Source: Ylistrum balloti (lineage: Eukaryota). From it: a stretch of 64,000 nucleotides of DNA. The DNA is taken from assembly GCF_031769215.1 (NCBI RefSeq), contig NW_026781981.1, forward strand, positions 806,001-870,000, read 5' to 3'. Positions within the stretch are counted from its first letter, which is position 1. Each line of letters begins with the position of its first letter. Below, one piece after another: positions 6,763 through 54,858 of the stretch. The notes beneath the pieces are model-generated. The model was not told where the DNA came from. It saw only the letters and a program-made list of their open reading frames with translations, and made no database searches. Position numbers and translations under genes: made by a program.

Positions 6763-7514
6763 CTGGAATAGGAGAAAACATACAACGTATTTTAGTTTTT
6801 TGATGTAGACAAAATTTACAATTGTAATTTGATAAATAAAATCTGATTATTTTACAAATAAAATTAATGATTATTGTCCTATTTACTCAGGTAAGATAAA
6901 TAACATATTAAAAGAATAAACGAGAAAAAGTTGATCCAACAGGTTTGATTTAATGTCCGCTGCATATGGCTTAACATTTTCCGAGAAATTGTCACACTCA
7001 TCAACTTCATTAATGCACATGTCTAATAAATTTCATCACATAATCGTTATCTAGTGAGTTGGTTCATGTCATAATTTTGTATTAAATATGACACTAGTGT
7101 GATATACCCTTGGGCGCCTTTTAGTGTCTGGACCAGCGAGAAATCGATTGTGATGTCAAATATGGCAATGACATTAATTCAGTTTTCGTCTATTGAAAAC
7201 TGTACAACAAAATGGCTGCCTTACGTTAGATTTTGCCCTCCAAATATTAACTTCAAATAAGCAAAACTGTTATGTGATAAGATTTATTGTCAGTTTTATG
7301 ACCCGTCTCGAAGTTTATTTCCATTCAAGCTTTTGTTATCAATTTATCAAAATTAATCCATTTTCATGAAACTCAAAATGTATCGAAGTTAAGGTGAGAT
7401 GGCCAACCATCAGGCATTCAAAATAAATCTTACAATAACGATTAAAATGTAAAAAAAATAATATATGACCGTTGATAACTCACTTTAGAATTCATCTTGA
7501 TCCGATGTCAATAT

Positions 7515-7561
7515 TTAACCAGTGTTGTTGACCAGCAAGGGAAGAAGCACCAGTGCTGCCA
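7515..7561 (-). CDS. GY1 coding exon 3: (L)AALVLLPLLVNNTG*
   Basis: Acceptor tatatttcag|TG at 7562/7561 is phase-compatible with the exon-2 donor. TAA at 7517-7515. A 3'UTR donor AAA|gtgagt follows 31 nt after the stop (7484/7483). Confidence 0.8.
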
Positions 7562-8214
7562 CTGAAATATACGTCTCAGATGCATTAAGTCTCAAACACG
7601 AGATAATGAACAGTTCGTAGTTAGATTATACAGCAATACTTGGGCAGGTGACAGGTACGGAAAATGCTAGGAACAAGTAGGTTGTTATAAAATAGGTATT
7701 GATAGATAGTACAAGATATTTAGAAAGGTAATTAAAGACATTATTACGGAGATTAAGTAGTACTTTGATGAGCGCCTGTCAATACAAATTTAGAATTATT
7801 CATAAGTGAAACAGAAATCAACTCTTTCGTATAGATGGCGCTACAGTAGCCAATGTGTTATAACCTTTGGCCTACGTAACCTTAGGCGATGACCCGAAAT
7901 GTATGGTTCGACGCTCCCTACGCTGTTTTTGTCTATCAGAATGATGGGCAACGGACCTGTCTGTGCTGACATGATTGTATTATTTGTGCACGATTCTTGC
8001 CCTTATCGCTAAGGACAGCATGCGTTCAGTGAGGTAGCCACCAATTACTACAATAAGACCCTGGCTGTTCATTTGGCGATAAATACAGCAAAGAAATAAA
8101 CACACATCAAACTGTTTGATGTCTAGGGACTTGTCACACAGCCTAAGAGTCTAAACTGTTGAAACCTAAAAGGTAACTGATCACATTTTTGTTAATACTT
8201 TTTGCAATACTTAC

Positions 8215-8584
8215 ATAGAAGGTACAGATAGTCATCATTTCCAGCATCAGCAGCCGCAGCAATAGCAGCACCAGGGGGTATTCTAGGTACTGGATAGGGT
8301 AAATACACTACCCTGTTTGGTATACCATGTCCTTTTCCTCCGTAACCCTTTCCATATCCATGACCATATCCTCCGTATCCTTTTCCATATCCGCCATATC
8401 CTCCATATCCGCCTTGTCCTCCATATCCACCGAATCCGCCATAACCATACATGTCATATCCTCCTCCATTTCCCCCTATAATGAAGCCATCGTGACCATA
8501 TCCGCCCCCATACTCGCCACCAAGACAGCAACCCACAGATATGAGAATTGTCAGGATCAGCAGAGCTAGGGTGGCAAATTTCAT
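8215..8584 (-). CDS. GY1 main coding exon: secreted Gly/Tyr-rich protein (138 aa spliced), shell-matrix-like composition
   Basis: MKFATLALLILTILISVGCCLG signal peptide, then GGYGGYG/GKGYG repeats, YLPYPVP and AAAA-DAGNDD. Acceptor gtcaacag|AG at 8592/8591; phase-1 donor CTAT|gtaagt at 8215/8214. Confidence 0.9.
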
Positions 8585-8812
8585 GATTCCTCTGTTGACA
8601 AATTAAAAGAACAAAAGAAAGTTTACATGATATAAAACCAATATAATTGCCTACAAGTAAAATATAATGACGAACATATTTACAATATTGAATTATTTAC
8701 ATTACATTCATTTAGAAAAGAAACCAATTCTAACAAATTATATAGTATAGCATCGTCTTTCATATTAAAGTGTATTAAGAAATGGAAATTCTGTATACTT
8801 ATTTTCACTTAC

Positions 8813-8867
8813 CTCTTTACACCGAAGGGTCCTGAATGTGGGGTATAGATGGTGGTGAGTATATATA
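8813..8867 (-). promoter_or_regulatory. GY1 TATA box and short non-coding exon 1
   Basis: TATATATA at 8867-8860 (minus strand) and donor AAAGAG|gtaagt at 8813/8812, the same layout as GY2-4. Confidence 0.65.
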
Positions 8868-10744: not shown

Positions 10745-13700
10745 ATTCTGATGACGTTTTAGGGAAACCAGATAACAGACGCAGAAAACAACTAATTATT
10801 ATGATGACGTTTTCTTGGAGACCAGATAACAGACCCAGAAAACAACTAATTATTATGTTGACATTTCTTGGAGACCAGATAACAGACGCAGAAAACAACT
10901 AATTATTATGATAACGTTTTCTTGGAGACCAGATAACAGACCCAGAAAACAACTAATTATTATGTTGACATTTCTTGGAGACCAGATAACAGACAAAAAC
11001 AACTAATTATTATGTTGACATTTTTTGGAGACCAGATAACAGACAAAAACAACTAATTATTATGTTGACGTTTTTTGGAGACCAGATAACAGACAAAAAC
11101 AACTAATTATTATGATGACGTTTTCTTGGAGACCAGATAACAGACAAAAACAACTAATTATTATGATGACGTTTTCTTGGAGACCAGATAACAGACAAAA
11201 ACAACTAATTATTATGTTGACATTTTTTGGAGACCAGATAACAGACCCAGAAAACAACTAATTATTATGTTGACATTTCTTGGAGACCAGATAACAGACA
11301 AAAACAACTAATTATTATGATAACGTTTTCTTGGAGACCAGATAACAGACCCAGAAAACAACTAATTATTATGTTGACATTTTTTGGAGACCAGATAACA
11401 GACAAAAACAACTAATTATTATGTTGACATTTTTTGGAGACCAGATAACAGACAAAAACAACTAATTATTATGTTGACATTTTTTGGAGACCAGATAACA
11501 GACAAAAACAACTAATTATTATGTTGACAGACAGATAACAGACAAAAACAACTAATTATTATGTTGACATTTTCTTGGAGACCAGATAACAGACAAAAAC
11601 AACTAATTATTATGTTGACATTTTCTTGGAGACCAGATAACAGACAAAAAACAACTAATTATTATGTTGACACAGATAACAGACAAAAACAACTAATTAT
11701 TATGATGACATTTTTTGGAGACGAGATAACAGACAAAAACAACTAATTATTATGTTGACATTTTTTGGAGACCAGATAACAGACAAAAACAACTAATTAT
11801 TATGATGACGTTTTCTTGGAGACAGATAACAGACAAAAACAACAGACAAAAACAACTAATTATTATGTTGACATTTTTTGGAGACCAGATAACAGACAAA
11901 AACAACTAATTATTATGTTGACGTTTTCTTGGAGACCAGATAACAGACAAAAACAACTAATTATTATGATGACATTTTTTGGAGACCAGATAACAGACAA
12001 AAACAACTAATTATTATGTTGACATTTTTTGGAGACCAGATAACAGACAAAAAACAACTAATTATTATGTTGACATTTTTTGGAGACCAGATAACAGACA
12101 AAAACAACTAATTATTATGTTGACATTTTTTGGAGACCAGATAACAGACAAAAACAACTAATTATTATGTTGACATTTTTTGGAGACCAGATAACAGACA
12201 AAAACAACTAATTATTATGTTGAGATAACAGACAAAAACAACTAATTATTATGTTGACATTTTTTGGAGACCAGATAACAGACCCAGAAAACAACTAATT
12301 ATTATGTTGACATTTTTTGGAGACCAGATAACAGACAAAAAACAACTAATTATTATGTTGACATTTTTTGGAGACCAGACAACAGACAAAAACAACTAAT
12401 TATTATGATGACGTTTTCTTGGAGACCAGATAACAGACAAAAACAACTAATTATTATGTTGACATTTTCTTGGAGACCAGATAACAGACAAAAACAACTA
12501 ATTATTATGTTGACATTTTTTGGAGACCAGATAACAGACAAAAACAACTAATTATTATGTTGACGTTTTTTGGAGACCAGATAACAGACAAAAACAACTA
12601 ATTATTATGATGACGTTTTCTTGGAGACCAGATAACAGACAAAAACAACTAATTATTATGTTGACATTTTTTGGAGACCAGATAACAGACAAAAACAACT
12701 AATTATTATGATGACGTTTTCTTGGAGACCAGATAACAGACAAAAACAACTAATTATTATGTTGACATTTTTTGGAGACCAGATAACAGACAAAAACAAC
12801 TAATTATTATGATGTCGTTTTCTTGGAGACCAGATAACAGACAAAAACAACAAAAACAACTAATTATTATAACAGATAACAGACAAAAACAACTAATTAT
12901 TATGTTGACATTTTTTGATAACAGACAAAAACAACTAATTATTATGTTGACATTTTTTGGAGACCAGATAACAGACAAAAACAACTAATTATTATGATGA
13001 CGACAAAAACAACTAATTATTTTTTTGGAGACCAGATAACAGACAAAAACAACTAATTATTATGATGACATTTTTTAGATAACAGACAAAAACAACTAAT
13101 TATTATGATGACATTTTCTTGGAGACCAGATAACAGACAAAAAACAACTAATTATTATGTTGACGTTTTTTGGAGACCAGATAACAGACAAAAACAACTA
13201 ATTATTATGATGACATTTTTTCAGATAACAGACAAAAACAACTTATTATTGGAGACCAGATAACAGACAAAAACAACTAATTATTATGTTGACATTTTTT
13301 GGAGACCAGATAACAGACGCAGAAAACAACTAATTATTATGATGACGTTTTCTTGGAGACCAGATAACAGACAAAAACCAGATAACAGACAAAAACAACT
13401 AATTATTATGTTGACGTTTTATTGGAGACCAGATAACAGACAAAAACAACTAATTATTATGTTGACGTTTTCTTGGAGACCAGATAACAGACAAAAACAA
13501 CTAATTATTATGACAACTAATTATTATGTTGACGTTTTCAGACCAGATAAAGACAAAAACAACTAATTATTATGATGACATTTCTTGGAGACCAGATAAC
13601 AGACAAAAAACAACTAATTATTATGATGACGTTTTCTTGGAGACCAGATAACAGACAAAAACAACTAATTATTATGATGACGTTTTTTGGAGACCAGATA

Positions 13701-15365
13701 ACAGACAAAAACAACTAATTATTATGATGACGTTTTCTTGGAGACCAGATAACAGACAAAAACAACTAATTATTATGATGACGTTTTCTTGGAGACCAGA
13801 TAACAGACAAAAACAACTAATTATTATGATGACGTTTTCTTGGAGACCAGATAACAGACAAAAACAACTAATTATTATGATGACGTTTTCTTGGAGACCA
13901 GATAACAGACAAAAACAACTAATTATTATGATGACGTTTTCTTGGAGACCAGATAACAGACAAAAACAACTAATTATTATGATGACGTTTTCTTGGAGAC
14001 CAGACAACAGACAAAAACAACTAATTGTTATGTTGACATTTTCTTGGAGACCAGATAACAGACAAAAACAACTAATTATTATGATGACGTTTTCTTGGAG
14101 ACCAGATAACAGACAAAAACAACTAATTATTATGTTGACATTTTTTGGAGACCAGATAACAGACAAAAACAACTAATTATTATGTTGACATTTTTTGGAG
14201 ACCAGATAACAGACGCAGAAAACAACTAATTATTATGTTGACATTTTTTGGAGACCAGATAACAGACAAAAACAACTAATTATTATGATGACGTTTTCTT
14301 GGAGACCAGATAACAGACAAAAACAACTAATTGTTATGTTGACATTTTCTTGGAGACCAGATAACAGACAAAAACAACTAATTATTATGATGACATTTTT
14401 GGAGACCAGATAACAGACAAAAACAACTAATTATTATGTTGACATTTTTTGGAGACCAGATAACAGACAAAAAACAACTAATTATTATGTTGACATTTTT
14501 TGGAGACCAGATAACAGACAAAAACAACTAATTATTATGTTGACATTTTTTGGAGACCAGATAACAGACAAAAACAACTAATTATTATGTTGACATTTTT
14601 TGGAGACCAGATAACAGACAAAAACAACTAATTATTATGTTGACATTTTTTGGAGACCAGATAACAGACAAAAACAACTAATTATTATGATGACGTTTTC
14701 TTGGAGACCAGATAACAGACAAAAAACAACTAATTATTATGTTGACATTTTTTGGAGACCAGATAACAGACAAAAACAACTAATTATTATGTTGACATTT
14801 TTTGGAGACCAGATAACAGACAAAAACAACTAATTATTATGTTGACATTTTCTTGGAGACCAGATAACAGACAAAAACAACTAATTATTATGATGACGTT
14901 TTCTTGGAGACCAGATAACAGACAAAAAACAACTAATTATTATGTTGACATTTTTTGGAGACCAGATAACAGACAAAAACAACTAATTATTATGATGACG
15001 TTTTCTTGGAGACCAGATAACAGACAAAAACAACTAATTATTATGATGACGTTTTCTTGGATAACAGACAAAAACAACTAATTATTATGATGACGTTTTT
15101 TGGAGACCAGATAACAGACAAAAACAACTAATTATTATGATGACGTTTTCTTGGAGACCAGATAACAGACAAAAACAACTAATTATTATGTTGACGTTTT
15201 TTGGAGACCAGATAACAGACAAAAACAACTAATTATTATGATGACATTTCTTGGAGACCAGATAACAGACAAAAAACAACTAATTATTATGATGACGTTT
15301 TTTGGAGACCAGATAACAGACAAAAACAACTAATTATTATGTTGACGTTTTTTGGAGACCAGATA
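10745..15365. repeat. 51-bp satellite array, ~4.6 kb (ggagaccagataacagacaaaaacaactaattattatg(a/t)tgac(g/a)tttt(c/t)tt)
   Basis: Continuous tandem units. The 17-aa periodicity of the shadow ORFs (MMTFSWRPDNRQKQLII) confirms a 51-bp unit. Many units have small indels. Confidence 0.95.
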
Positions 15366-16644: not shown

Positions 16645-16705
16645 TATATAAATACGAGCTTTACTTTCGTCAAATCATCCTCACTTCACCGGCTCATCAG
16701 AACAG
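16645..16705 (+). promoter_or_regulatory. GY2 TATA box and non-coding exon 1
   Basis: TATATAAATA at 16645-16654 and donor AACAG|gtaagt at 16705/16706. The same layout occurs at 21122 and 25703. Confidence 0.75.
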
Positions 16706-17453: not shown

Positions 17454-17668
17454 GTGAGTACAAAACTGACATGTTTAAGATATAACAATTTAGCAAAACG
17501 TATTTCCTACATTGATTCAATGTTTACATAATTATTGCAGATAAGTGTGCTTTCATCATATCATATTGAATTGCTCTTAAAACTACAATGGAACAAGGTT
17601 ATAGTGATCTTTGTCAAGCACGCCTGTTCTTTCAATTGACATAGTTGAACAAATTTTGTTATTTTCAG

Positions 17669-17724
17669 TCGGAGGTGCCCTCTTGCTGCTGCTGCTGATC
17701 AATAATAACAACAACAGTGGATAG
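17669..17724 (+). CDS. GY2 coding exon 3: (F)GGALLLLLLINNNNNSG*
   Basis: Acceptor tttgttattttcag|TC, in frame, TAG at 17722-17724. 3'UTR donor GGAAG|gtagga at 17756/17757. Confidence 0.85.
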
Positions 17725-17870
17725 ACCATTTACCATGTAACGGACTATAACGGAAGGTAGGATGTTAAACTTATCATTTAAATCGAGGGTTTAAGTAAGC
17801 CTATTACCATTAGCGTCTATTTTATGTCATTACATGAACAAGCAACAATAAATTTAATTTTCTGTTTCAG

Positions 17871-17964
17871 ATTGACTTTCTTTGTGCGCGAGTCTCCTTG
17901 GCTGTTACCAAAGACCCCTGTGTGTTTGCGGTCATCATTTTACTTGTTAACATTCCTCAATAAA
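17871..17964 (+). other. GY2 non-coding terminal exon
   Basis: Acceptor ttttctgtttcag|ATTG, conserved motif at 17883-17920, AATAAA at 17959-17964. Confidence 0.75.
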
Positions 17965-20063
17965 GCATGTCATTCCAAACTCTGTAGTTTGTCGGTTTAT
18001 ACAATATTGTTCAAGGTATGATAAGTGGATATGATAATTGTTTTTAAGTATCTTCTGGAGATCGGTGACGAATTTAGTTACAGCTTAAGACAAAATTGAA
18101 TGTTAAAACGACACAAACTAATACTGTCCGTACTCAAAAGTGTCTTCAAAGTGACGTAAATATCACAATATCACACGATTCACAACAAAACCAAACATGT
18201 GAATCTGCTCGTCGTTGGAAACGCAGAAATTTCCACCCACCTGCTGGTGATTTAGAATGTTAAGTTGACTATGACATCAGGTATGGATGAAGGCATACAA
18301 AAAGACTGAAAAGTGTCATCGGTCGAAAAATAACAAAGGATAAACTTTCATGTCAACAGATTTTACTCTAAAACTAAAGTTCGATGAAACTAAGGCAAAA
18401 ACATGAAAGAAAACACTGACATTTTAACGAAATCCAAATTCAAACATAATTATGAAAGTAGGACAAAATCTGAACAAAAAACATTTACATTGAGACCAGA
18501 AAACTATAAAGAAGACCATGCATTCCAGCGGGTTCCCGTCTTCTGCTTCACCAATGACACCTGCAAAATGAACATTTTGGTCGTTCCATGAAGGCAAACT
18601 CAAGTTCCCTAGTGAGATCAAGTTAGATAACAAATGTAACATACAACCTATACTAACTTACATGTCTAACTTCATATCGTGTTAGGAAATAAAATAAGAC
18701 TGAATGAGATAATCACATCAACTAAATCGTGTAAACACCAGAAAATGCTGGATCAATGTTTATACGGATTCCTTGGAAAGGTAACAGAAATACTCGCGTC
18801 TTTTCTATCAGTTCTCTAACGTAGATCGATAAAGCATTATGCACATGTTTCAATATGTTTATAGGATAAATTTATCATTCTTTAAAAAAAAATGCAGTAA
18901 AGGTAGAAAACAATTTCAGCATCAAAGACATAAATTATCCATGCAATTTTAGACAATTTGCAACATAGTATAAATTTCTTTTGATAAATATTTCATAAAA
19001 CATAAAAAAAAATATTTCGCATGAAAATGCACTTGCAAGACACAATTATAAAGAAAAATGCCATAAATTTGCAATTTTCTCCCGTTATATATTTGCAAAT
19101 TTCCCAGAAAAATTGTACCAAAAATCAACTAATTCCATGTGGTGGAACGTTCTCATATCGCCGCCTGAATATATGAGTAACAACCTTGTCTGAAACCCTA
19201 TTATATGCTTTTTATATACAAACTTTTATATTGAATATCAGTGAAATGAGAAAACGATAGAAGACATAAATTTGATCCATGTCAAGATTAATTATTTACC
19301 AATTATATATCTTGACATTCTGACGTCATCGACAAAATAATTAGATTGAAATCATCGCTCCCAAGTAGTTCTATGCAACATTTGACCTGTCGTTATCATT
19401 AACGCTCTTTGTACATTCCAGGACTCCATGTGTACATGTTCTCTTCGTTTATATTTGAGTTTGGATTGTGATTGTTGATGACATGTTGATGTTAAGTAAA
19501 TTCTATCGACAAACAAATATACAGGCAGTTTTGTTTAAATAAATACAATGTTTATTCCATATGATAACTTTCTGTATGATATATTCTGAATGTAAAATTT
19601 TTCATTCTATATTTCTGCGATCAAAACGTATTCGTTTTCTTATTTTGCTTGAAAAGTCTTCAATCTCGACAATGTAATCAATCTTTGTTCCTTTTGGTGT
19701 GGTAAAGGCTCGTTTGAAACAACCTTCAGCAAACGGAGTATGATGTTTTTATTATTCATTAATATTTATTAGGCTGATCAGCTAAGTATAATTAGAATAT
19801 CGAGAGCACGAAGTTTATGTTGTGTATAAAATACATCTTTATATTTCATCAAACACTTTCAATTTAGAAAGAGTTTTATTTGTTGTGCATACAAAACAAT
19901 ATTTCCGTTGAATATTCCTCCTTGCGATAATAACTGCCAACTTCTGATGCAGTTTAGCTCTTGAATGATGATATTGACTATTGTGACAGAAGGAGGTAGA
20001 CCAAGCTTTGACGACCGGCAATCTAAAGTCTCATCAAGTTCCAGTGACTGTAATTTTGATATA

Positions 20064-22120: not shown

Positions 22121-22176
22121 TCGGAGGTGCCCTCTTGTTGTTGCTGCTGATCAATAATAACAACAACAGTGGATAG
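22121..22176 (+). CDS. GY3 coding exon 3: (F)GGALLLLLLINNNNNSG*
   Basis: Acceptor ttattttcag|TC at 22120/22121; TAG at 22174-22176; 3'UTR donor at 22208/22209. Confidence 0.85.
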
Positions 22177-22322
22177 ACCATTTACCATGTAACGGACTAC
22201 AACGGAAGGTAGGATGTTAAACTTATCATTTAAATCGAGGGTTAAAATAAACCCATTGTCATTTTAGTCTATTTTATGTCATTTCATGAACTAACAACAA
22301 TATTTTTAATTTTCTGTTTCAG

Positions 22323-22417
22323 ATTGATTTTCTTTGTGCGCGAGACTACTTGGCTGTTACCAAAGACCCCTGTGTGTTTGCGGTCATCATTTTACTTATA
22401 TATCATTCCTGAATAAA
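22323..22417 (+). other. GY3 non-coding terminal exon
   Basis: Acceptor tttctgtttcag|ATTG, motif at 22335-22372, AATAAA at 22412-22417. Confidence 0.75.
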
Positions 22418-24299
22418 GCATATCATTCCAAACTCTATAGTTTGTCTGTTTATACAATATTGTTCAAGGTATAAAAAGTAAATATAATTTCTTTGCTTTA
22501 TGTATCTTCTGGAGATCGGTCACAAATTAAGTTAAAATGTAAGACAAAGTCGAGTGTTAAAACGACACAAATTCATGAGCAAATTTCCTTCATACATTAA
22601 CGAATACTTTTCGTACTCAAAAGTGTCTTCAAAGTGACGTAAATATCACATCAGAGGATACATAACAAAACCTAACATGTGAATCTGCTCGTCGTTGGAA
22701 ACACAGAAGTTCGACTCACCTGCTAGTGCTTAAGAGTGTAAAGTTGACTATGAAATCAGGTTTGAACGCGGGCATATGAAAAGTCTGAGAAGTGTTTCTT
22801 CATGTGGATCATCTGTCGAAAACAACAAAGGATATACTTACATATCAACAGATTAAAACCAAAACTGAAATTTGATGAAACTAGAGGCAAAGACAAAAAA
22901 GAAAAAAACGACAAGTTAACGAAATCCTAATTCAAACATAACTATGAAAGCAGGATAAAATCTGAGACTAGAGAAAAATAAAGAAGAATAAGACCAGACC
23001 AGGCACTCCAGAAGGATTCCCATTTTCCGCTTTATCAATTACACCTGAAACGTAAATTTTGGTCGTTTCAAGAAGATAAACTCAGATTCCCTTGTGAGAT
23101 CAAGTTAAATAACAAATGTAACAAAACATCCATTCTAACAAAAGGAATCTAAGTTCGTATCGCATAAGGAACTAAAATGATTCTGAATAAGGCGATTATG
23201 ATTAACAATAAACTTCGCCATAATCTTCATCAATCTTTCAAAACTCTTGAAAGTAAGCCAGTAAGTATATGTGCTGTCCACATATTTTAAGCAAATCGAG
23301 ATAATTGATTAAGCCCTTGAAAATCACATTGACTACAACTAGTAAACACCAGAGAATGCTGAATCTATGTTTATACGAATTCCTTGGAAATGTAACGGAA
23401 ATTCCTCACGTCTTTATCTCTAACGTAGATCAATAAAGCATCGGACATTATGGACATGTTTCACTATGTTTATTCATCATTCTTTATTTTAAAAAATGCA
23501 GTAAAGGTAGAAAACGACAGAAGACATGAATGTGATCCATGTCCAGATTAAGCATTTGACCAATTAAATATCTTGACAATCTGAAATTATCGACAAAGTA
23601 ATTAAATTGAATTGTCGTTCGTTCCCAAGTAATTCTTTGTAACATTTGACTTGTCTTTGTCATAAACAAGCCTGTCTCCTATTCATTCTTTGTAAATAAA
23701 TAGGGTATGTACTGCTTTAAAATCGTTTCATCTCATCAAATAATACTCATACATTGGTTTCAAGTTGTACAAAGAAAGTTTTCATGAGTACTGCTATCTT
23801 ACCTTTACGGTATCAAGGTAAGAAAATGCAATATTTTAACAATAAACAGAAGAATTTATAATACTTTCATCGTATTCCTAAGTTTTTTAAGACTTGCTTA
23901 TCAAGTCGGTTTTGACAAATTTGATTGTCAGGAACAGATTGACCAGTTTCATATTTTATAACTTGACTCCATGATGACTGTAAAGTGAAATAAATAATTT
24001 TTTCTATTTCACATCTGTATTTATATAGAGTCTGTTCACTTGAAATATCATAATTTTCATTCTTATGAGCTGATTTTTAAATCAATTTTGAGATCGCTCA
24101 ATCGAAGTAAATAAAGAAATTAAACAAAAATATTTAGAATTGAGACATTTTCTGAGGGCAAATTTTCGAAAAGTACATATATCTATACAAGAAAAAAAAT
24201 CAAAATGAAATAAATTTTGCTAATAGTCATATTTACAAGAAATCTAATGACCATATCAATCGTTATATACCCACAAGAACTGAAAATAAAAAACGCAAC

Positions 24300-26462: not shown

Positions 26463-26468
26463 GTGAGT

Positions 26469-26471
<3 letters not shown>

Positions 26472-26556: not shown

Positions 26557-26558
<2 letters not shown>

Positions 26559-26719: not shown

Positions 26720-26865
26720 ACCATTTACCATGCAACGGACTACAACGGAAGTTAGGATGTTAAAGTTGTCATTTAAATCGAGGTTTAAAATAATCCCATT
26801 ACCATCGGCGTCTATTTTATGTCATTTCATGAACAAACAACAATATTTTATATTCTCTGTTACAG

Positions 26866-26959
26866 ATTTATTTTCTTTGTGCGCGAGACTCCTTGGCTGT
26901 TACCAAAAACCCCTGTTTGTTTGCTGTCAGCATTTTACTTGTTAACATTCCTAAATAAA
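26866..26959 (+). other. GY4 non-coding terminal exon
   Basis: Acceptor ttctctgttacag|ATTT, motif TGTGCGCGAG..TGGCTGTTACCAAAAACCCCTG at 26878-26915, AATAAA at 26954-26959. Confidence 0.7.
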
Positions 26960-29584
26960 GCATGTCATTCCAAACTTTATAGTTTGTCTTTTTATACAAT
27001 ACTGTCCAAAGTATAATAAGTGGATAAGATAATTTTTTTAGTATCATCTTGAGTTCGGTCACGAATACTCTTCAAGGTGTATGAAGTGGATTGTATCCCT
27101 GTTTTATACATTGCCTGAAGATTGTGCACTAATTTGGTATTAACATATGAAAAAGTCGAGTGTAAAAACGACACAAATTCTTCATAGTGTCGTTAACAAT
27201 ACGATATCAAGAATTGACGCTGTATCACCATATTCAAGTTACTGTGGTTTTGATAAAGTGACTTCATGTGAAAAAAATGTATTCATTTTATTTTCGTTCA
27301 ACTGGAAAGTTCCTAAATACATCAATATAAAACCGAGTCAGCCTGCTCAGTGGAACCTGTTATAAAACAAATGTTACTCTATACAACCATAAAATCTAAA
27401 AATCACAAACACTGCTGTTCGATATTATAACAACGTCTTCGTTCATTATACCTGTGATTTTGTGAATAACAAATGTGAGAAAATGGATAACACGTTTATT
27501 CTTTCGTTGTTAATATTAGCCTTTTGATTTATCTCTAATATCCCTGTCAGCTTGAATTTTAATGCAAATACTTGTAAGTTGTTACTATCAACCTGTACAC
27601 ATCATGACATAACAATCATAACTAACTGTGTTCCGCATGCTATGGAGTTTATGCCTGTGACGTCTTTGACACTGCCACAGACAGCATTTTGAGGAGATGA
27701 AATTAATTTCTAAATTTTGATCAGTACCAGAGTATAGTTTATTGGATTTTGTTTCGTTGATATATAAGGCGATCATTCCAATTTGTTTTGTTGGCTTTAA
27801 ATTGGAAATAACATAGTTGAAACTAGATCGACGCAAAGATCAAGTAGATATTGAAAATTTGAAATTGAACAGTAAATCTTTTGTGCTTCTTCACTTCTAC
27901 AAAATGAATAAAAATTACCATAATGAATGAAAAATGGCCACGCAAGGGGTGACATTTGCATTTATATGTTACAACAAGATCTACAAATCATGCAACAAAG
28001 CCATAACTTTCTACCTCCGAGATGTACATTGAAGATATAACGACTACCAATCTAACGGTTATATGAGAATTTTCAATGTTAATTATTTCAAACATTTGAA
28101 GACAATTACAAATCGCCTCCCTTTGCATAAACGGCAATGTTATATGTTAGGTTTGAAACATTGGACGTCTTTTTGACTACATGATAAATATTCGTATCAT
28201 ATATAATGTGATTGACAGTTTCTACCCCAATATTCACTAAGAGAAAGATATACCTGGCGGATATCATTAATGAATCAGAAGGGTATTACGTCATGCAGGA
28301 AAACATTTTCGTCTCCTTATAGTCTTATATATTTCATATAGAATAAAGTTCGAACATCGACTATCCCGTTTATTTTAAATGTCGCTAAAAAAGTAAACCG
28401 TTGCTTTTGCAAATTTGCAAATACAAGCCGAAATTCAAAAGTGTAAAAATCTGCACCTGTTATAGCAGGAATCACACATAAAAATGTATACACACTAATT
28501 AACTTGCAAAATGTGAGGAACGACCTACTGACAGCTTGTATTATGTTTCCTTCCGGTTACCAGCTTGGAACTGCTACTACCTTGCTGATAGATCAACCAA
28601 GTAGCATTGAGAAATTATGAATTCTGTATCAATTCAGAAATATAATAGCTCTGTTCCTTTATGTATTAATGATAATATTTACATACAAAATATGCTGAAG
28701 CAACTTTCCATTATAACGACATTGCCGAAGAAGCAAAGTTCATGTGATTGCCTGTTTAAATTCCCAGCTGTGGTTTTAACCGCTCTGTGCTCGCGGTTAT
28801 TGACATCTTGTGGGTTAGATAATATTAAATAAATCATACGTATGTCCGGATCTACAGGCACCGATGTACGGTTTAGTGGTTTAGTAACGACGGCTTGAGG
28901 TTTACATTAAATCAGAATATGTCAACGTTGCGGCAAGACTAGCAATATATGTTTACCTATAATTGCACCGCAGGGTACATGTATATTTTCGTAAACTTAT
29001 TCATTATCTAGATAACACCATAAATCGCTATATATAAATACAGATCATACGTCCAAGGACTGCCATCTAGGTTTTATTTACATCTATGTTACTTAATGAA
29101 AATTCAAAAGATCTGTTTTCATAATGACTGTAATGAAACTTACCGAACATTCTTAAGCAAATCTAGAAATTTTGAACATTTTAGAAAAGAATTTATATAA
29201 ATATTTTAAATGCCTGTACAATCTATATTTAAAATGTTTTTATCATTGCAATAAAACATTAAATTTATTATTAATGGAACAGGTTAATAATTTTATTTCG
29301 GACTATGAGTCTGAATGTTTATATAATCTCGCTCATCTACATAACATTGCAATCAGCAAAAGTACACAGTTAAGAAAACGTAAAAGTTTGGAAATAAGTA
29401 CCTTATCTCTTAATCATTTATAGACCGATATATATATACTATTAACACATGTTATTATTCTCAGTATTATTTATGTATTAACATATCTTTGGTAACATGA
29501 ATTCATAGTCATGAAGTCATCATAGATTTTAATAATGTGCGTAGTAGTTGATTCATGCCAATACTAAAATTAATTGGCATATTA

Positions 29585-31115: not shown

Positions 31116-31349
31116 CTGAAAATAAAAATAAAATAGTAATCAGAAAACAATAGAGTGAATCCGTATATATACTGCTTGTATTATTTAATCTTAAATTAAA
31201 CTTCTTACAACATACATTCTCAAGCAATGCATAAATCGTTTGATGTCAATACTTCATTATTTGTAATAATCGTTGTTGTAACTAGGAAAATCATGACACA
31301 CTTACAAATCCAGTGTGGTGCCAGTTATTTACTTGTCGGTATCCATGTT

Positions 31350-33757: not shown

Positions 33758-35189
33758 TATCCAAATAATTTTGTGGAGTCCTGGAAAGTTCCTTGTTACT
33801 ATGATTGTAAATACAACTCGAAGCGCTGATTTAAGTACTTGTTATAAAACTATCTTCTCTGTTGTTACTATCACAAAGGTAACAGACAGGTTTGTCCCCA
33901 AAAGTGATTGCTAAGTGTATCTGTAATATCACAAAATAAATAATCAAAAGAGTGTACATCTTGTGTGGTCAAACCGTACAATTAAACAAGAGAACATATA
34001 TTGTATGAAATTTATTTATTGCATTATTGTAGATCTGGACCAATGATTAAAAGTGTTGTTTTTCAGTGATTTCATTTTCTCAGATCAACAACCATCGGAC
34101 AATCATCGGACAGAAATAAATAGCATCGACCAGTTAGATAAACATAGACTATCTCGTTATAACATTCGACAGCTCCGTGTTTCTTATGTAGATTTTTCTC
34201 CAATGACAGCTAAAGTTTAAATTAAAAGTTGTATGGTAGACTGTAGAATATGCTAGACAGCAATACAAATAACGTAGTAGGTTGTCAGGATATGCCTTCC
34301 TAAAGGAAAACACGTGATGCCTAATCTTTAACCATTGCTGTCGTATAAAAGATGATATTTAAATGCATTTTGTTTAATTGTCATTATTGACTGAGCTATG
34401 ACAAAAATAAAGCTCAATTATAATCAATTCCTATGATTGTTGATTTTGCTGGTAAAATTTATTATTACGTATTATAAACGTGCGAAAGGTACAAAATTGT
34501 GAGATTTGTCCTAGCTGAATCAATGCATTTGTTATAGGAACTGTTTTTGCTATACCTTAACAGAAAAAAATTATAATGTTATAACAAAAATATTTCATTC
34601 GAAATCTTTTCTTTATCTTACGGTACACAGTAGCGGGATGTGAAACATTCCAAAACTAGTACCTACAAATATTCTTAGTTATTAGTAAACGAACGTATAT
34701 TGATATGATACGGTTACTTATCGTGTAGGTTGTGGCTTTTAGTCGTGTGGTATACATCTACATTATATAAAACACATCAAATATGATGCATTAACTATAA
34801 TTTTAATTACTTCATAATACACACACGTACCATGATGAATTTTAATGTCTCGGCATCATTCATGCACATTATTTGTCTCGGTATTTGCTTAATATATATG
34901 TTAAATCAATAAATCGATAAAAAATATAAGAAATATAGATAACGACATTACGCTAACTGTGAGATGAATGCCGGGTATATACCGATAGGTTTTCATTAGT
35001 GGATCTGATGATTGATAACCTGGGTAATGGTTTCGGGGATATCCTTATTCTAAATAAGTCAACCTCAAAGTATCCCTCTGGAAAATAATAATGCAGTGCA
35101 TACAGTTGATGGCCTAATAGTATAAATTTCTCGTGTAATACTTGATGTTAAATACATACATGTAGGAAGTAGTGAGTGGTTTTGGTTTA

Positions 35190-35258
35190 TGATTTTATTG
35201 TATTATTTGTAACAGCCTTTCTGTTCGCTTAATTCAAAGTCGCAAATACAAACCAGTC
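35190..35258 (-). other. GY7 probable non-coding terminal exon
   Basis: Minus-strand acceptor tttacattaaaacag|GACT at 35259/35258, GGCTGTTACAAA at 35217-35206 (the same GGCTGTTAC core as GY1-4), and AATAAA at 35199-35194. Confidence 0.55.
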
Positions 35259-35344
35259 CTGTTTTAATGTAAATATATAACAGAATTCAGGCTGATGGTA
35301 AAACTATGGAACTATGTGTGACGTTCACTGATAGATTGAGTTAT

Positions 35345-35860
35345 TTGCTTCATTTACACGACAACCTCTTCTACATCCGCCAATTATCTCGATCATTTCC
35401 TACAACGCAACCATCAAGGACATCTTTTCACCAGGCTGTATGATAAACGTGATGATTTAAATACATCTGATATGAATTTTCCATTTCTGGATAGCAACAT
35501 CCTGCATCCCAACCCTGTGTGTCCTGGTAGATTCTATGTTCAAAGGCCTGTTCCCAATATCACGATTTTAATACAAGAAGTGGAAACACTCTAAATACAC
35601 GCTTTTGAAAGATGCAGGTTGATACAAATTATGCGAAGTTTTATGGTCGCCATAGTGATCTCATTGTAAAATGTTCTTTTCCTTTATGCGATATGAAGTC
35701 GTGCATGTTTGATACTCGTTAGCTTGCTTGTTGGTTCCGTTCTGGTATACATGTACCTTGCTCTCATTTGACATTACTTACTTGGACTCACCAAGGTTTA
35801 CATGGCGGGTGTCGTCGATGAAGCAGAAGACTGTTATTCTTATTCTCCGGGTACTTTTTC
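35345..35860 (+). mobile_element. Degenerate Penelope-like retroelement 3' part (RT thumb + terminal motif), inside the GY7 3'UTR intron
   Basis: Translates TTSSTSANYLDHFLQRNHQGHLFTRLYDKRDDLNTSDMNFPFLDSNI...ACSQYHDF...KFYGRHSDLI, with frameshifts and stops. The terminal motif catggcgggtgtcgtcgatgaagcagaagac at 35801-35831 recurs elsewhere in the window. Confidence 0.7.
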
Positions 35861-36089
35861 AGAAGTCTCCTTTTAAATCTTTCTTTTGATCATATTTCCC
35901 CCTAATTTTATCAAATTTGAATTTATATTATTATGTTGACATGTTGGTATTTTCTTGCTGTATATGAATAACGAAAAACTCGTTTGATTTGAACTCATTT
36001 TTTAACCTTTATTCTTGATAACGTACAAGGAAAATCGGTAGAACAAGCATATCGTCACGTAAAAATATTCATTGTCACTGTAAATCTGA

Positions 36090-36530
36090 AATAGATAAGT
36101 AGATAAATACATGAATAAATAGATAACAAGTAAATTATATAGATAATAAAAAATGATAGGATAAAGAGATAGATGATGAATAAATAGAAAATAAATAAAC
36201 TGGTTGACATTAAATAGATAGAAAATAAATGATTAGATAGATAATAAATAAATACATAGATATTAAATAAATAATGAATAGATAAATAATAAATGAATAA
36301 TAAATAAATTGATATATAATAGATAAACAGAAAGATAACAAATTAACATATAATATATATATTGATAAATGATAAATAAATAGATAGATATTAAAAGAAT
36401 AGATAATGAATCAATAGATATATAATAAATAAATTGATAAATTGATAAATATTAAATAAATAGACAATAAACAATTAGAATGATAATAAATAAATAGATA
36501 GATAATAAATAGATAAAAAATAGAAGCATA
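36090..36530. repeat. A/T low-complexity (aaatagataa-like) tract
   Basis: Directly visible ataaatagat-type degenerate repeats. Confidence 0.85.
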
Positions 36531-36778
36531 ATTTGAATTGCGTATGATTTCTTTTATGACTTAATACCAGCAATTGTTTTCAAATAAGTATTATAAAAAG
36601 TGAGATACATGTTTAACTACAATAACAGATTTTGTGATAAATCTTAAAAATGAATTGTGCTTATCAAGTTATCCTTATATCATGACCACAGACGATTGAA
36701 AAGGAAATGAATGTTACATGTTCCATGCGTGTTAGATGTTACGATACCTTTGATAACACCAGTCGTTCAGCTTTGACT

Positions 36779-46400: not shown

Positions 46401-47519
46401 TAGAAAAAAAGTCCAAATATTGACAAACAGTATTTTTGCAATACCACACCTTAAAAGTATAAGTTATAAATATAGATTAAATCTTTTTTTGTGAAATGCA
46501 ATACTCACAGTTTTATTTTGCTAATTCTAAACCGTTTTCTTGATAAATGCAGACAATTTTTCCTCTTTTTTATTTTTGAAACTTTTGAAACAATATAAAA
46601 TCACATTTTTAATATTCTATTCTTAAATATATGAGAAATCATATCTCTTAGCATATATACATACTTTTATACATGTTACTACAGCAAGGCAGATTCATGA
46701 TTTCAAGAGTTGAAAAACATAGTGCTTTGTTCTGCTTTAGATAGAGAAAGAAAAAGACAGAAGTAAGAAAAGACAGAGAAAGGACAGAAAAAGAAGGTGC
46801 ATAAAGAAAAATGAAGATTCCTTTTTCATATCATATTATTATTAATAAATTTGATAAAAATATTTCATATATACATTAAATACGAAAAAAATGAAATTTA
46901 ATATATCATGTCAACAGGAATGTAAACATCAGGGTCTAGGCAAGGCTAGCTATACAACTTTTGTGTTTTAAGTATGTGGTTTTGATGTGCTCGTTAGCTT
47001 TATTCTATGCAAAGCGGTTTCATGGTTTTTAATACTGATCCCCGTGGGAGGACGTGATTTTGATGTTTCGTTCGAACCTTCTGGAATTTACTCAGTCGCC
47101 TCCTAGGTTTCAACATTTAGGCCTTTAGGACAACTGATGAATCCTTAAAGGTCAAACCTTCTGTATGATGCAGTTTACTTCATTGTTTGGCTCTGTTGTC
47201 TACTGTATCCTATTTGTATCCTGTATGTTTTTTGTACAATCTTAATTGATCAATGATACCCTGACGGAATATATGTAGTAGGATATCTTTGTCCTACTGA
47301 ATCACGCATTGTTCTTCATTTGCTTGTTCGCATGGTAAATTTAAGTATCGTTCTTTCATTTTGTGCATATTTGTCAACGCGTTTTTTTTTTAAGAATATT
47401 GATTTTGATAACACAACCGTATTATCTTGATTCATTTATGCCTTATGTTGAAATATCTGTGCATATACTTACATACAGCGATGAGAACAAAAGACTAAAT
47501 ATCAACATTTCAACGAAGA

Positions 47520-47595
47520 ATTATTTAATGACAAAAATACACAGGGGTTTTTGGTATTAACTGTAAGTGACGTTGTTGACCTCTTGCGCGAAAAC
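47520..47595 (-). other. GY8 non-coding terminal exon
   Basis: Acceptor tttttattcatttgtag|GTTT at 47596/47595, then GCGCAAGAGG and TACCAAAAACCCCTGTGT (47556-47539), then ATTAAA at 47529-47524. Confidence 0.7.
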
Positions 47596-47868
47596 CTACA
47601 AATGAATAAAAAAAATCATTTTAAACAAGGAGAGACTTTTTTGTATGGTTCATAATTACTGTAACCACTATTATGATAACTATACACGAAGTTAATCACG
47701 GAGTCAACGTTATGGATCTTCTGAAAATATCATAAGCATATTCAGTCATAAAGATCGGGTTCTGAATATCTTTAGAATACATTCATAGTAATTCAACAGT
47801 TAACAAAAGCATTTGACGTAATAAGACATAAATAACTTACCTATATACAAATCTGTTTGTTGTTTTAT

Positions 47869-47918
47869 CTAACCAGTGTTATTGTTGTTGGATAAGAGAG
47901 CCAGTAACAACACGGCTC
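47869..47918 (-). CDS. GY8 coding exon 3: (G)AVLLLALLSNNNNTG*
   Basis: Acceptor aatgtttcag|GA at 47919/47918; TAG at 47871-47869; 3'UTR donor ATAG|gtaagt 28 nt after the stop (47841/47840). Confidence 0.8.
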
Positions 47919-52696: not shown

Positions 52697-52871
52697 AGAA
52701 AGATGATTTCCTCAGGGGGGATGATGAACCATGAGGAAGTTGATTGAATTTTATCCTGCCATGATTGGTTTAAGGTCAGGGTATAAAAAGTACGACCTCC
52801 ACATCTAGTAAACCAGAATCCCTGAACAGGACGGGATCCTCATCTACATCACAGGGTCCTGTATCATAGGG
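52697..52871 (+). promoter_or_regulatory. GY9 promoter and non-coding exon 1
   Basis: AGAAAGATGAT at 52697-52707, ATTGG at 52764-52768, TATAAAA at 52782-52788, first donor AGGG|gtaagt at 52871/52872. Confidence 0.7.
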
Positions 52872-53542
52872 GTAAGTAAAACTCATCAATATCTCATGGT
52901 TCTGTAGCATAGGGGTAAGTAAGCGGTTAGGTTAAATCTATAACTTATAATCCTGTAGGGTAGGGGTAAGTAAAACTTATTTACATCTCAGGGTCCTGTG
53001 GCGTACGGTTAGGTTAAATCTGTAACTTATAGTCCTGTAGCTTAGGGATAAGTAATATTTATCTACGCCCTAGGTCCGTGTAGACAATTTTGATAAAATT
53101 ATAAAGTATGTTCCTACCCAGTACAGAATTAATGATATGTAGATATAAATAAAATGTCAATTTCTTTTAACGTTTTTTGCAGCAACGTAAGTTCCATGTG
53201 TAACCTTCGGTGTTGGGTTATACAGCGGGTGTTCTGTAAAATCTTGGTTTTATCATTGATGGAAACATGTTAATAATGTATCATTAGGTGGGGTTAGTAA
53301 TATATAACAATCATGATATCCGTTTATGCTTTTGAAAATATGTATAGTGGGAAGTTTCAGAATAATGTAACATCGAATCATGGTCATGATGTAGGGAAGG
53401 CGATACATGGTGATGTTAATAATTACTATAGTATATGTAAAACTTTTACGACGTATGTAAAATGGTGACTATCCTTATTATGATTTTATCGTCTGAATTG
53501 ATAAATTCTTTATTAACAAACCTTATAATGGCAGGTCACGAG

Positions 53543-53921
53543 ATGCGTTTGCTACTCATAGCAATCGCCTCCGGGGCGATCCTCATGGGATTGTTCACGG
53601 CGGTCAATTGTGATGGTGGGTACAGCGGGTACGGGTACGGCGGGTACAATGATTATGACATGTATAGTGGACAAGGGTACGGAGGATATATGTATCCAGG
53701 ATACGGTGGGCAAGGATACGGATATGGTGGAAAAGGATATATAGGATACTCGGGACAGGGATACAGCGGTTACGAAGGAAAGGGAGGAAAAGGTGGTGGC
53801 TATTTTGGCGGTAATGCATTGAGTGTACCTTATGGTCTACGTGTTCCGCCAATCGCCCCACCGCTCGGCTTAGACCAAAGTGGACTCTATGGTGCTAACG
53901 ACTCCTCGCTCTTTACTGTCA
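53543..53921 (+). CDS. GY9 main coding exon: secreted Gly/Tyr-rich protein (145 aa spliced)
   Basis: Acceptor atggcag|GTCACGAG then ATG at 53543. Encodes MRLLLIAIASGAILMGLFTAVNC signal + GYG/GQGY/GGKG repeats + VPPIAPP. Phase-1 donor GTCA|gtaagt at 53921/53922. Confidence 0.9.
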
Positions 53922-54174
53922 GTAAGTATTTGTATCAAAACTAAGGCACGTTATAGGTTAGATGGTTTCAATTAATCTGTATTTATCCAAATGTTTAATT
54001 GTTAGCAAGAGTATGTTAGAAATAATTGAAAGTAACACCGCGCCTGATAATGAAAACCGCATATCAAATAAATAAGCGTTGCTTTTAACTGATGAAGCAC
54101 AAGACCAAATAAACTTGAAATGTAAAATTTCATTGGATTCTGTTACTTATATAACATGTCGTTTCTTCTTGCAG

Positions 54175-54233
54175 TTGCTATCGGATTCCTGTTCTGGTTG
54201 ATTGCTAGTGGTGCCAGGAACAGGACTGGTTAG
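54175..54233 (+). CDS. GY9 coding exon 3: (I)AIGFLFWLIASGARNRTG*
   Basis: Acceptor tttcttcttgcag|TT at 54174/54175; TAG at 54231-54233; 3'UTR donor ATAT|gtaagt 34 nt after the stop (54267/54268). Confidence 0.85.
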
Positions 54234-54858
54234 ATACGGATAACAGCTACAATACCTTTGTATATATGTAAGTATGATCGTTCACAACCAAATATAATTC
54301 AAAATAGCATGCACACAGCATATACATTTTTTTTTTACATAAATATGTGAAGTGGAAACGCAGATAGAACGTCCATTCACTGCCTCTTCCCACCGTGTAT
54401 TAGATGTTGATTGTGTTTCGCTAGGTTTTGTTGATCCGAAAATTTGCCAAAAATTGAAGTAGTTAGATAATAATAAATACATTAATTGTAAAAAAATTCA
54501 AATAAGTTTCCATGCTATATTACCTCTTTATAAAAACCATCAACCAAAAGTAACTATCCGACAATATTCACAGATACAATTTATACATTTCGTCACATTT
54601 TCATCTCCGTAGTGTGCCAATCGTAAATTGTCGATATTTTTTGATGCGTGTTTCTTAGTTTATATTCCAAGTCAATTTAGAAAAGAATGAAACATGAACA
54701 TGCAACATCCAATTATGATAAATTTATCATGATGTAAAAACTTGGTTATGGATTTTATTAGCCGTTACCATTTGAATAAGAGCCACTTTATAAATATAAA
54801 GTCTATTCGATATACGTAAATGAATACAAGCTGTGTAAATGTATTTTTGCTTTTTCAG

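What the first reader, a model, noticed from the sequence alone, without database searches (positions are those of the whole stretch)
7483..54268. Conserved 3'UTR intron placed about 30 nt after the stop codon across the cluster
Donors occur 31 nt (GY1, 7483), 32 nt (GY2, 17757; GY3, 22209), 31 nt (GY7, 36747), 28 nt (GY8, 47840) and 34 nt (GY9, 54268) after the stop. GY6 has candidates at 17 or 44 nt. Each pairs with a downstream acceptor followed by AATAAA/ATTAAA 59-89 nt into the last exon. 3'UTR introns are uncommon. Junctions less than ~50-55 nt downstream of the stop are established to escape EJC-dependent NMD. Keeping this distance across divergent paralogs suggests selection, possibly for EJC-enhanced export, localisation or translation of highly expressed secretory mRNAs (inference).
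Basis: partly seen in the sequence, partly recalled or inferred. Interest (0 to 1): 0.7.

Follow-up and report, generated by a model that had tools for sequence, protein, structure and literature searches.

The report
Conserved intron just after stop codon
A cluster of scallop genes for glycine/tyrosine-rich secreted proteins very probably has a short intron about 30 bases after the stop codon, followed by a small, highly conserved non-coding last exon. The same layout occurs in other scallops and in oysters, but no RNA data were available to show the splicing directly.

Summary
The window is Ylistrum balloti (saucer scallop). Strong GT donors lie 28-34 nt after the stop in GY1, GY2, GY3, GY7, GY8 and GY9. 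Most are followed by strong acceptors, and by AATAAA/ATTAAA 59-89 nt into the last exon.

This is far from chance. Between paralogues, and between Ylistrum and Pecten, only the coding exons and the predicted last exon stay alignable. The intron does not. Homologues in Pecten, Mizuhopecten, three oysters or oyster-like bivalves and a second Ylistrum locus show the same build, with the junction 29-55 nt after the stop.

Splicing itself is not shown. The only run served was genomic DNA, and no transcript contig was found.

Its donor has changed from GT to TT.

The conserved core of the last exon is unstructured. It contains a perfect miR-9 8-mer (ACCAAAGA) in GY1-3 and Pecten. The sister subfamily has a miR-1986 8-mer at the equivalent place.

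Stop-proximal 3'UTR introns are a known class in vertebrates, so this is a new member of that class. Selection on the distance to avoid NMD fits the data but is unproven, and plain inheritance explains the roughly 30 nt equally well.

The parts
7515..7561 (-). GY1 last coding exon (hydrophobic tail ..AALVLLPLLVNNTG, stop TAA 7517-7515)
   Evidence: The Pecten orthologue protein P0002 ends the same way.
7484..7514 (-). GY1 3'UTR part 1, 31 nt between stop and donor
   Evidence: The sequence is not conserved with Pecten (8 of 29 matches), but the length is 31 against 29.
6763..7483 (-). GY1 predicted 3'UTR intron, 721 nt, AAA|GTGAGT ... TTCCAG|
   Evidence: Not alignable to the Pecten intron.
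6646..6762 (-). GY1 terminal non-coding exon. Contains the conserved core TGTGCGCGAG..GGCTGTTACCAAAGACCCCTG, the miR-9 8-mer at 6728-6721, UGUAUAUA at 6704-6697 and AATAAA at 6689-6684.
   Evidence: BLAST match to Pecten, window 6768-6646 against L001 11543-11662, 76%, E 5e-21.
17669..17724 (+). GY2 last coding exon (..GGALLLLLLINNNNNSG, stop TAG 17722-17724)
17757..17870 (+). GY2 predicted 3'UTR intron, 114 nt, 32 nt after the stop, AAG|GTAGGA ... GTTTCAG|
   Evidence: It shows no notable fold, so it is not a mirtron.
17871..17985 (+). GY2 terminal non-coding exon, with the miR-9 8-mer at 17907-17914 and AATAAA at 17959-17964, followed by a GU-rich stretch
22121..22176 (+). GY3 last coding exon. 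The exon1+exon2 product equals NCBI protein P0001 exactly.
22209..22322 (+). GY3 predicted 3'UTR intron, 114 nt, 32 nt after the stop
   Evidence: Identical in a second individual's DNA (record 7).
22323..22440 (+). GY3 terminal non-coding exon, with the miR-9 8-mer at 22359-22366 and AATAAA at 22412-22417
26752..26865 (+). GY4 homologue of the intron, with the donor GT changed to TT at 26752-26753. A weak GAA|GTTAGG lies 1 nt upstream. The acceptor is intact.
26866..26980 (+). GY4 terminal exon homologue. The 8-mer has changed to ACCAAAAA (26902-26909). AATAAA lies at 26954-26959.
31116..31332 (-). GY6 candidate 3'UTR intron (donor at 31332, 17 nt after the stop, or at 31305, 44 nt after it). 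The gene may be decayed.
   Evidence: No BLAST similarity of its last exon to the others.
35259..36747 (-). GY7 predicted 3'UTR intron, 1489 nt, 31 nt after stop TAA 36781-36779. The acceptor is weak, with an alternative AG at 35293-35292.
35170..35258 (-). GY7 terminal exon. It keeps GGCTGTTAC of the conserved core. AATAAA lies at 35199-35194.
   Evidence: (read directly)
47596..47840 (-). GY8 predicted 3'UTR intron, 245 nt, 28 nt after stop TAG 47871-47869, TAG|GTAAGT ... TTTGTAG|
47500..47595 (-). GY8 terminal exon (CGCGCAAGAGG ... ACCAAAAACCCCTG, ATTAAA 47529-47524). It aligns to nearly the whole reverse complement of miR-9.
54268..54858 (+). GY9 predicted 3'UTR intron, 591 nt, 34 nt after stop TAG 54231-54233, TAT|GTAAGT ... 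TTTTCAG|
54859..54970 (+). GY9 terminal exon (AAGCGCAAGAGG ... TCATACACGTCACCAAAATGCCCCG, AATAAA 54941-54946)

Best explanation
Each gene of this Ylistrum balloti family is built from three parts. They are a signal peptide plus Gly/Tyr-rich exon, a short exon for a hydrophobic tail that ends in Gly-stop, and a terminal non-coding exon.

The stop codon is followed by about 30 nt. Next comes a true spliceosomal intron of 114-1489 nt, and then the terminal exon of about 90-120 nt. The intron was inherited from the family's ancestor, which lived before oysters and scallops split. All duplicates, in either orientation, carried it along.

Splicing removes a variable, unconstrained spacer. It joins the stop region to a small regulatory and 3'-end cassette: an unstructured conserved core, then AAUAAA and a GU-rich element. 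In the scallop cluster the core holds a miR-9 8-mer with extra 3' pairing. The mature 3'UTR is therefore only about 125 nt.

The exon junction lies 28-34 nt after the stop. An exon junction complex would be laid about 24 nt upstream of the junction. That puts it right behind the stop codon, where the terminating ribosome would remove it.

Shown here: the sequence anatomy, its non-random nature and its conservation. Inferred: that splicing happens, the miRNA function, and what the junction position means for NMD.
For: - Identity of the window and the coding splice: (P0001 equals GY3 exon1+exon2).
- Anatomy.
- Donors are rare-class sites placed within a 7-nt span in five divergent lineages. Acceptors are rare-class except in GY7.
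- Only the exons and the predicted terminal exon give BLAST matches between paralogues and between Ylistrum and Pecten. That match starts 6 nt before the AG. The terminal exon is 82% identical, against 74% for coding exon 2, and the intron is at shuffle level.
- Same layout in other species, measured as stop-to-donor distance: Pecten maximus 29 nt. Mizuhopecten 55, 40 and 40 nt. A second Ylistrum locus 45 nt. Saccostrea cucullata 36 nt. S. echinata 42 nt. An oyster known from Logan DNA contigs 45 nt. An ENA bivalve 45 nt.
- The conserved block always follows the gene's own strand.
- The block has no consensus fold.
- miR-9 8-mer and extended complementarity. The miR-9 sequence string was checked in papers, and miR-9 is highly expressed in an oyster (PMC7488030).
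Against: - No transcript evidence at all. The single run served is genomic DNA and runs unspliced through the introns, as DNA must.
- No spliced contig or transcript-derived protein turned up.
- GY4 lacks the GT, GY7 has a poor acceptor, and GY6 is ambiguous.
- AATAAA hexamers occur inside some introns, for example at 17846-17851 in GY2, so some transcripts could end early.
- GY8, GY9 and GY4 have ACCAAAA, not the perfect miR-9 seed match. The oyster terminal exons lack it too.
Confidence: 0.8

Rival explanations
1. The junction is actively held within about 50-55 nt of the stop by selection, because a more distant junction would trigger EJC-dependent NMD, and the nearby EJC benefits export or translation.
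For: All 16 measured homologues, in at least five species and two bivalve orders, have 28-55 nt (GY6 is ambiguous at 17 or 44). Over the same set, intron length varies 13-fold and the last exon about 3-fold. The sequence of the stretch is free to change while its length stays the same: 31 against 29 nt, with 8 of 29 matches. The 50-nt rule and conserved proximal 3'UTR introns are documented in vertebrates (PMC7310861).
Against: The stretch does change by 9-15 nt between close relatives. A 30-nt target is rarely hit by indels or insertions, so no selection is needed to explain the pattern. EJC-dependent NMD is not established in molluscs, and in flies and nematodes NMD is largely EJC-independent (my own knowledge). 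Proximal introns are not always NMD-immune. No neutral expectation could be computed.
Confidence: 0.35
2. There is no splicing. The conserved block is the end of a long unspliced 3'UTR, or the mRNAs end earlier. On this view the GT, pyrimidine tract and AG are coincidences.
For: No RNA evidence is available. AATAAA hexamers occur inside some of the introns.
Against: Donor and acceptor motifs of rare strength sit at homologous places in lineages whose flanking sequence has diverged to noise. Conservation starts at the AG. The spacer varies from 114 to 1489 nt without conservation.
Confidence: 0.08
3. The conserved block is an independent element lying beside the genes, not an exon. It could be an enhancer, a repeat fragment or a separate small transcript.
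For: It is more conserved than the coding exons.
Against: It always has the gene's orientation. It begins at a strong acceptor and ends in a poly(A) signal with a GU-rich downstream stretch. It occurs nowhere else in the window or in 90 kb of related loci. It has no Rfam match and no fold.
Confidence: 0.05
4. The last exon is an alternative coding exon, reached by skipping the hydrophobic exon or by stop-codon read-through, and gives a second C-terminus.
For: One frame (VRE..WLLPKTP) is open in GY1 and GY2 (read).
Against: If exon 2 is skipped, GY2 and GY3 stop after one codon, while GY1 has no stop before the poly(A) signal. Read-through of GY1 meets a stop within the 31 nt. The frame of the conserved block relative to the acceptor differs between paralogues.
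Confidence: 0.03

Closest known systems
[quoted passage not shown] 2020, PMC7310861)
   Same: A single intron lies wholly in the 3'UTR, less than 50 nt after the stop, and its position is conserved over hundreds of millions of years. In vertebrates the proximal class is larger than the distal one: 1239 against 489 human genes, with 167 conserved from zebrafish to human.
   Different: Here it sits in a lineage-specific, tandemly duplicated family of low-complexity secreted proteins of bivalves, not in RNA-binding or neural regulators. Splicing is not yet shown by RNA. NMD sensitivity is unknown.
The 50-55-nt rule of EJC-dependent nonsense-mediated decay
   Same: All junctions found lie 28-55 nt after the stop. 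This is the zone where the terminating ribosome is thought to clear the EJC.
   Different: The rule was established in mammals, and in plants with other distances. It has not been tested in molluscs, and one homologue sits exactly at 55 nt.
Shematrin / shematrin-like shell matrix proteins of pearl oysters
   Same: Signal peptide followed by Gly/Tyr-rich repeats. The Saccostrea homologue is named 'shematrin-like protein 2' by NCBI.
   Different: These proteins end in a hydrophobic stretch plus N-rich ..T/S-G. They do not end in the basic tail described for shematrins (my own knowledge). There is no Pfam family, and similarity outside the repeats is limited to the AxYIPYxVP and tail regions.
Canonical miRNA 8-mer sites with 3' supplementary pairing (miR-9; miR-1986 in the sister subfamily)
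   Same: ACCAAAGA is the perfect miR-9 8-mer. It is conserved between Ylistrum GY1-3 and Pecten, with GGCUG pairing to miRNA positions 13-17. GAAATCCA in the sister genes matches miR-1986.
   Different: This was not tested functionally. The conserved block is longer than a miRNA site needs. GY8 and GY9 mismatch at seed position 2.

Membership tests
Stop-proximal 3'UTR intron (3'UI <50 nt from stop) | The intron lies entirely downstream of the annotated stop codon | tested here: met
   The stop of each model is fixed by the NCBI proteins P0001, P0002, P0005, P0007 and P0014 and by family alignment. The donors lie after it.
Stop-proximal 3'UTR intron (3'UI <50 nt from stop) | Distance from stop to intron under 50 nt | tested here: met
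   28-34 nt in the window. 29-45 nt in most relatives. One Mizuhopecten copy has 55 nt.
Stop-proximal 3'UTR intron (3'UI <50 nt from stop) | The intron is actually removed from the mRNA | not testable with these tools
   Only one run was served, and it is genomic DNA. No transcript contigs were found.
Stop-proximal 3'UTR intron (3'UI <50 nt from stop) | Consensus splice signals at both ends | tested here: met
   Donor and acceptor strengths are given. Exceptions are GY4 (donor TT), GY7 (weak acceptor) and Mizuhopecten copy 3 (acceptor CG).
Stop-proximal 3'UTR intron (3'UI <50 nt from stop) | Position conserved between species | tested here: met
   Found in Pecten, Mizuhopecten, two Saccostrea species, one further oyster and one unnamed bivalve assembly whose terminal exon resembles the oysters'.
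NMD-immune junction (50-55-nt rule) | mRNA level independent of UPF1 and the EJC | not testable with these tools
   This needs knock-down or inhibitor experiments in bivalve tissue.
Shematrin family | Signal peptide plus Gly/Tyr-rich XGnX repeats | tested here: met
   Translations. The signal peptide was judged by eye only.
Shematrin family | Basic C-terminal tail (my own knowledge of the family description) | tested here: not met
   All members end in a hydrophobic stretch followed by N-rich ..T/S-G.
miR-9 target site | Perfect 7-8-nt seed match in the 3'UTR, conserved between species | tested here: met
   ACCAAAGA is present in GY1, GY2, GY3 and the Pecten orthologue. It is absent from GY4, GY8, GY9 and the oysters.
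miR-9 target site | Repression by the miRNA in cells where both are expressed | not testable with these tools
   Only the presence of miR-9 in an oyster comes from the literature.

The most novel reading that the evidence does not exclude
A 3'UTR intron has been kept for more than 400 million years (the oyster-scallop split, by my own knowledge). Its junction has never drifted beyond about 55 nt from the stop. This would mean that the EJC-based 50-55-nt NMD rule operates in lophotrochozoans.

The intron would also delimit an exchangeable terminal 'miRNA cassette' exon, carrying miR-9 sites in one subfamily and miR-1986 sites in the other. Copies that lose a splice site also lose the miRNA site (GY4, Mizuhopecten copy 3).
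Probability: 0.25. Interest if true: 0.65.

Novelty: new member of a known kind. Interest (0 to 1): 0.45.

Why it matters
If RNA data confirm it, this is a clean invertebrate example of a deeply conserved stop-proximal 3'UTR intron, present in many tandem copies with introns of very different length.

That makes it a natural series for asking whether molluscs use the EJC-dependent distance rule for NMD. That question is essentially untested outside vertebrates, plants and a few model invertebrates.

It also matters for annotation. The true 3'UTRs of these genes, and their likely miRNA sites, lie in a separate exon up to 1.5 kb downstream. UTR-based target prediction that ignores the intron would miss them.

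Tried and rejected
- RNA evidence. The one run search returned a single run, which proved to be genomic DNA of another individual. It has even depth over intergenic DNA, and its contigs pass unspliced through both introns.
- Transcript contigs through proteins. Three word searches and the full profile search gave only genome-derived models. The ten Logan contigs of an oyster homologue all keep both introns, so they are DNA. In one search a 16-nt junction string was looked for only inside those fetched contigs. No collection was searched with joined sequence.
- A scan of metagenome contigs for the conserved 21-mer gave one GC-rich bacterial chance match.
- Rfam found no family in the window.
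- RNA structure. There is no consensus structure in the last exon. Neither the 114-nt introns nor the last exons fold better than shuffles, so mirtron and structured-element ideas are rejected.
- Coding readings of the last exon were rejected because of inconsistent frames (see the rivals).
- Pfam gave no family for the proteins.
- The segment-wise global identity test has a noisy null, with z only 1.4-2.7. BLAST was used instead. The two oysters' last exons did not reach E 1e-3, although shared strings are visible by eye.
Full report
**Source and genes**

The window is from Ylistrum balloti, assembly GCA_031769215.1, scaffold JAUZWB010000149.1. The NCBI protein 'pupal cuticle protein 36-like' (P0001) is exactly exon 1 plus exon 2 of the gene at 21.4-22.2 kb.

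The window holds eight related genes, in both orientations:
- GY1, about 8584-6646, minus strand
- GY2, 17129-17985, plus strand
- GY3, about 21550-22440, plus strand
- GY4, 26129-26980, plus strand
- GY6, 32216-31020, minus strand
- GY7, 37402-35170, minus strand
- GY8, 48467-47500, minus strand
- GY9, 53462-54970, plus strand

Each encodes a signal peptide and Gly/Tyr-rich repeats in one exon. A short second exon encodes a hydrophobic stretch that ends in N-rich ..T/S-G and then the stop. Pfam has no family for them.

**The observation**

Every coordinate in the finding was reproduced. The stop-to-donor distance is 31 nt in GY1, 32 in GY2 and GY3, 31 in GY7, 28 in GY8 and 34 in GY9. GY6 has 17 or 44. 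The introns measure 721, 114, 114, 1489, 245 and 591 nt. AATAAA or ATTAAA lies 59-89 nt into the last exon.

It has the same 32-nt spacing and an intact acceptor, but its donor reads TT at 26752. A weak GT lies 1 nt upstream.

**Is it more than chance?**

A rough donor matrix was scored over both strands of the window. Sites as good as the claimed donors occur once per 250-4,600 nt. The chance of one falling inside the 7-nt span is therefore 0.002-0.028 for each of five divergent lineages. These donors score as well as the genes' own coding-intron donors.

Acceptors as pyrimidine-rich as those of GY1-4, 6, 8 and 9 occur once per 630-7,500 nt. GY7's acceptor is poor, and a better AG lies at 35293-35292.

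**Comparative evidence**

The strongest evidence comes from comparison. BLAST between divergent paralogues finds only the repeat exon and the region of the predicted last exon. The introns are not alignable, apart from some 50-90 nt before the acceptor between GY1 and GY2-4.

The Pecten maximus orthologue of GY1 (P0002, locus L001) has GTAAGT 29 nt after its stop and an intron of 656 nt. Its last exon matches window 6768-6646 at 76% over 123 nt (E 5e-21). The match starts 6 nt before the predicted AG and ends about 40 nt past the poly(A) signal.

Measured segment by segment, that exon is 82% identical. Coding exon 2 is 74% identical. The intron and the 31-nt stretch after the stop are at shuffle level.

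The conserved block always has the gene's orientation. It is followed by a poly(A) signal and a GU-rich stretch, and it occurs nowhere else in the window or in the related loci.

**The same build in other bivalves**

- Three tandem Mizuhopecten genes have 55, 40 and 40 nt.
- Their Ylistrum counterpart on another scaffold has 45 nt.
- Saccostrea cucullata has 36 nt. The annotated protein there wrongly reads into intron 1.
- S. echinata has 42 nt.
- An oyster known from Logan DNA contigs has 45 nt.
- An unnamed bivalve assembly in ENA, whose terminal exon resembles the oysters', has 45 nt.

The architecture therefore predates the oyster-scallop split. I take that split to be over 400 million years old, from my own knowledge.

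**What is missing**

There is no RNA evidence. Laid on 17000-22600, it behaves as genomic DNA of another individual. No transcript-derived protein or contig was found. Splicing is thus an inference, though a strong one. I put it at about 0.8 for the cluster as a whole. It is lower for GY6 and GY7, and open for GY4.

**What the last exon carries**

It has no Rfam match, no consensus structure and no unusual stability. It therefore looks like a linear binding platform.

Its invariant core in GY1-3 and Pecten is TGTRCGCGAG ... GGCTGYTACCAAAGACCCCTG. ACCAAAGA is the perfect 8-mer for miR-9. The miR-9 sequence string was confirmed in papers, and miR-9 is highly expressed in an oyster (PMC7488030). 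The neighbouring GGCUG can pair with miRNA positions 13-17.

GY8 and GY9 mismatch at seed position 2. Even so, they align to almost the entire reverse complement of miR-9 (P 0.004 and 0.015 against shuffled miRNA).

In the sister subfamily the conserved core of the last exon contains GAAATCCA. This is the 8-mer for miR-1986 (sequence from PMC7328434; loci).

Two copies that have lost a splice site have also lost the site. GY4 has a TT donor and ACCAAAAA. Mizuhopecten copy 3 has a CG acceptor and GGGAAAACCA. These are leads, not proofs. The miR-9 match was recognised from memory among a few dozen conserved seeds, so its chance level is about 2% before the extra pairing is counted.

**Mechanism and interpretation**

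The most economical reading is an inherited intron that separates the stop region from a small regulatory and polyadenylation exon. Its removal yields a mature 3'UTR of about 125 nt.

The junction at 28-34 nt would place an exon junction complex directly behind the stop codon, where the terminating ribosome should displace it. That fits the mammalian 50-55-nt rule.

The rule has not been shown in molluscs. The stretch does drift by 9-15 nt between close relatives, and a 30-nt target attracts few indels. Selection on the distance is therefore possible but not demonstrated.

Stop-proximal 3'UTR introns are a described and numerous class in vertebrates, and some of them remain NMD-sensitive (PMC7310861). 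This case is therefore a new member of a known kind, not a new kind.

That step is listed under referred steps.

Noticed in passing
window 26752-26753 and 26902-26909 (GY4); L003 about 16640-16680: Two family copies have lost a 3'UTR splice signal: GY4 has donor GT changed to TT, and Mizuhopecten copy 3 has acceptor AG changed to CG. Both have also lost the miRNA seed match in the last exon. This could be early decay of the copies, or a sign that the two features depend on each other.
   Followed up: partly
L005 6302-6400 and 334-440; L003 11668-11736 and 14146-14215: The sister subfamily ('sulfur globule protein CV1-like' or 'glycine-rich protein-like') has the same 3'UTR intron. Its conserved terminal exon has the core TCTGTGGAAATCCA, which contains the miR-1986 8-mer GAAATCCA.
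   Followed up: partly
window 6697-6704 (-), 47842-47849 (-), 54259-54266 (+), 31043-31050 (-): Pumilio-like UGUAHAUA motifs lie on the sense strand of GY 3'UTRs. In GY8 and GY9 they sit directly before the donor. There are 4 of the window's 41 matches within about 1 kb of mature UTR, where about 0.3 would be expected.
   Followed up: partly
window 7515-7561, 17669-17724, 47869-47918, 54175-54233: The proteins do not end like typical secreted matrix proteins. They have a hydrophobic stretch of 10-15 residues followed by N-rich ..T/S-G. The tail is conserved from scallops to oysters, and Gly is always the last residue. This may be a membrane anchor or a processing signal.
   Followed up: no
L004 6001-6420; L008 92-529; L017 4001-4420: The annotated or called oyster proteins (P0003, P0008, P0009) read through the first intron's donor and so have false C-termini (..GLLCKSI and similar). 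The real hydrophobic exon lies 150-260 nt downstream.
   Followed up: yes
window 60620-61831 (+): An intronless 403-aa ORF for a Cys-loop ligand-gated ion channel subunit (Pfam Neur_chan_LBD, E 1e-41, and Neur_chan_memb).
   Followed up: partly
window 12750-15860: Long minisatellite arrays give open frames on both strands, in units of about 33-45 nt. They lie between GY1 and GY2.
   Followed up: no
window 26472-26556: A perfect (CT)42 microsatellite fills much of GY4 intron 1. It lets the ORF finder read from exon 1 into exon 2.
   Followed up: no
window 32000-32100 (-): GY6 exon 1 seems to change frame within the Gly/Tyr-rich part. A more family-like reading continues in another frame. GY6 may be a decaying copy.
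   Followed up: no
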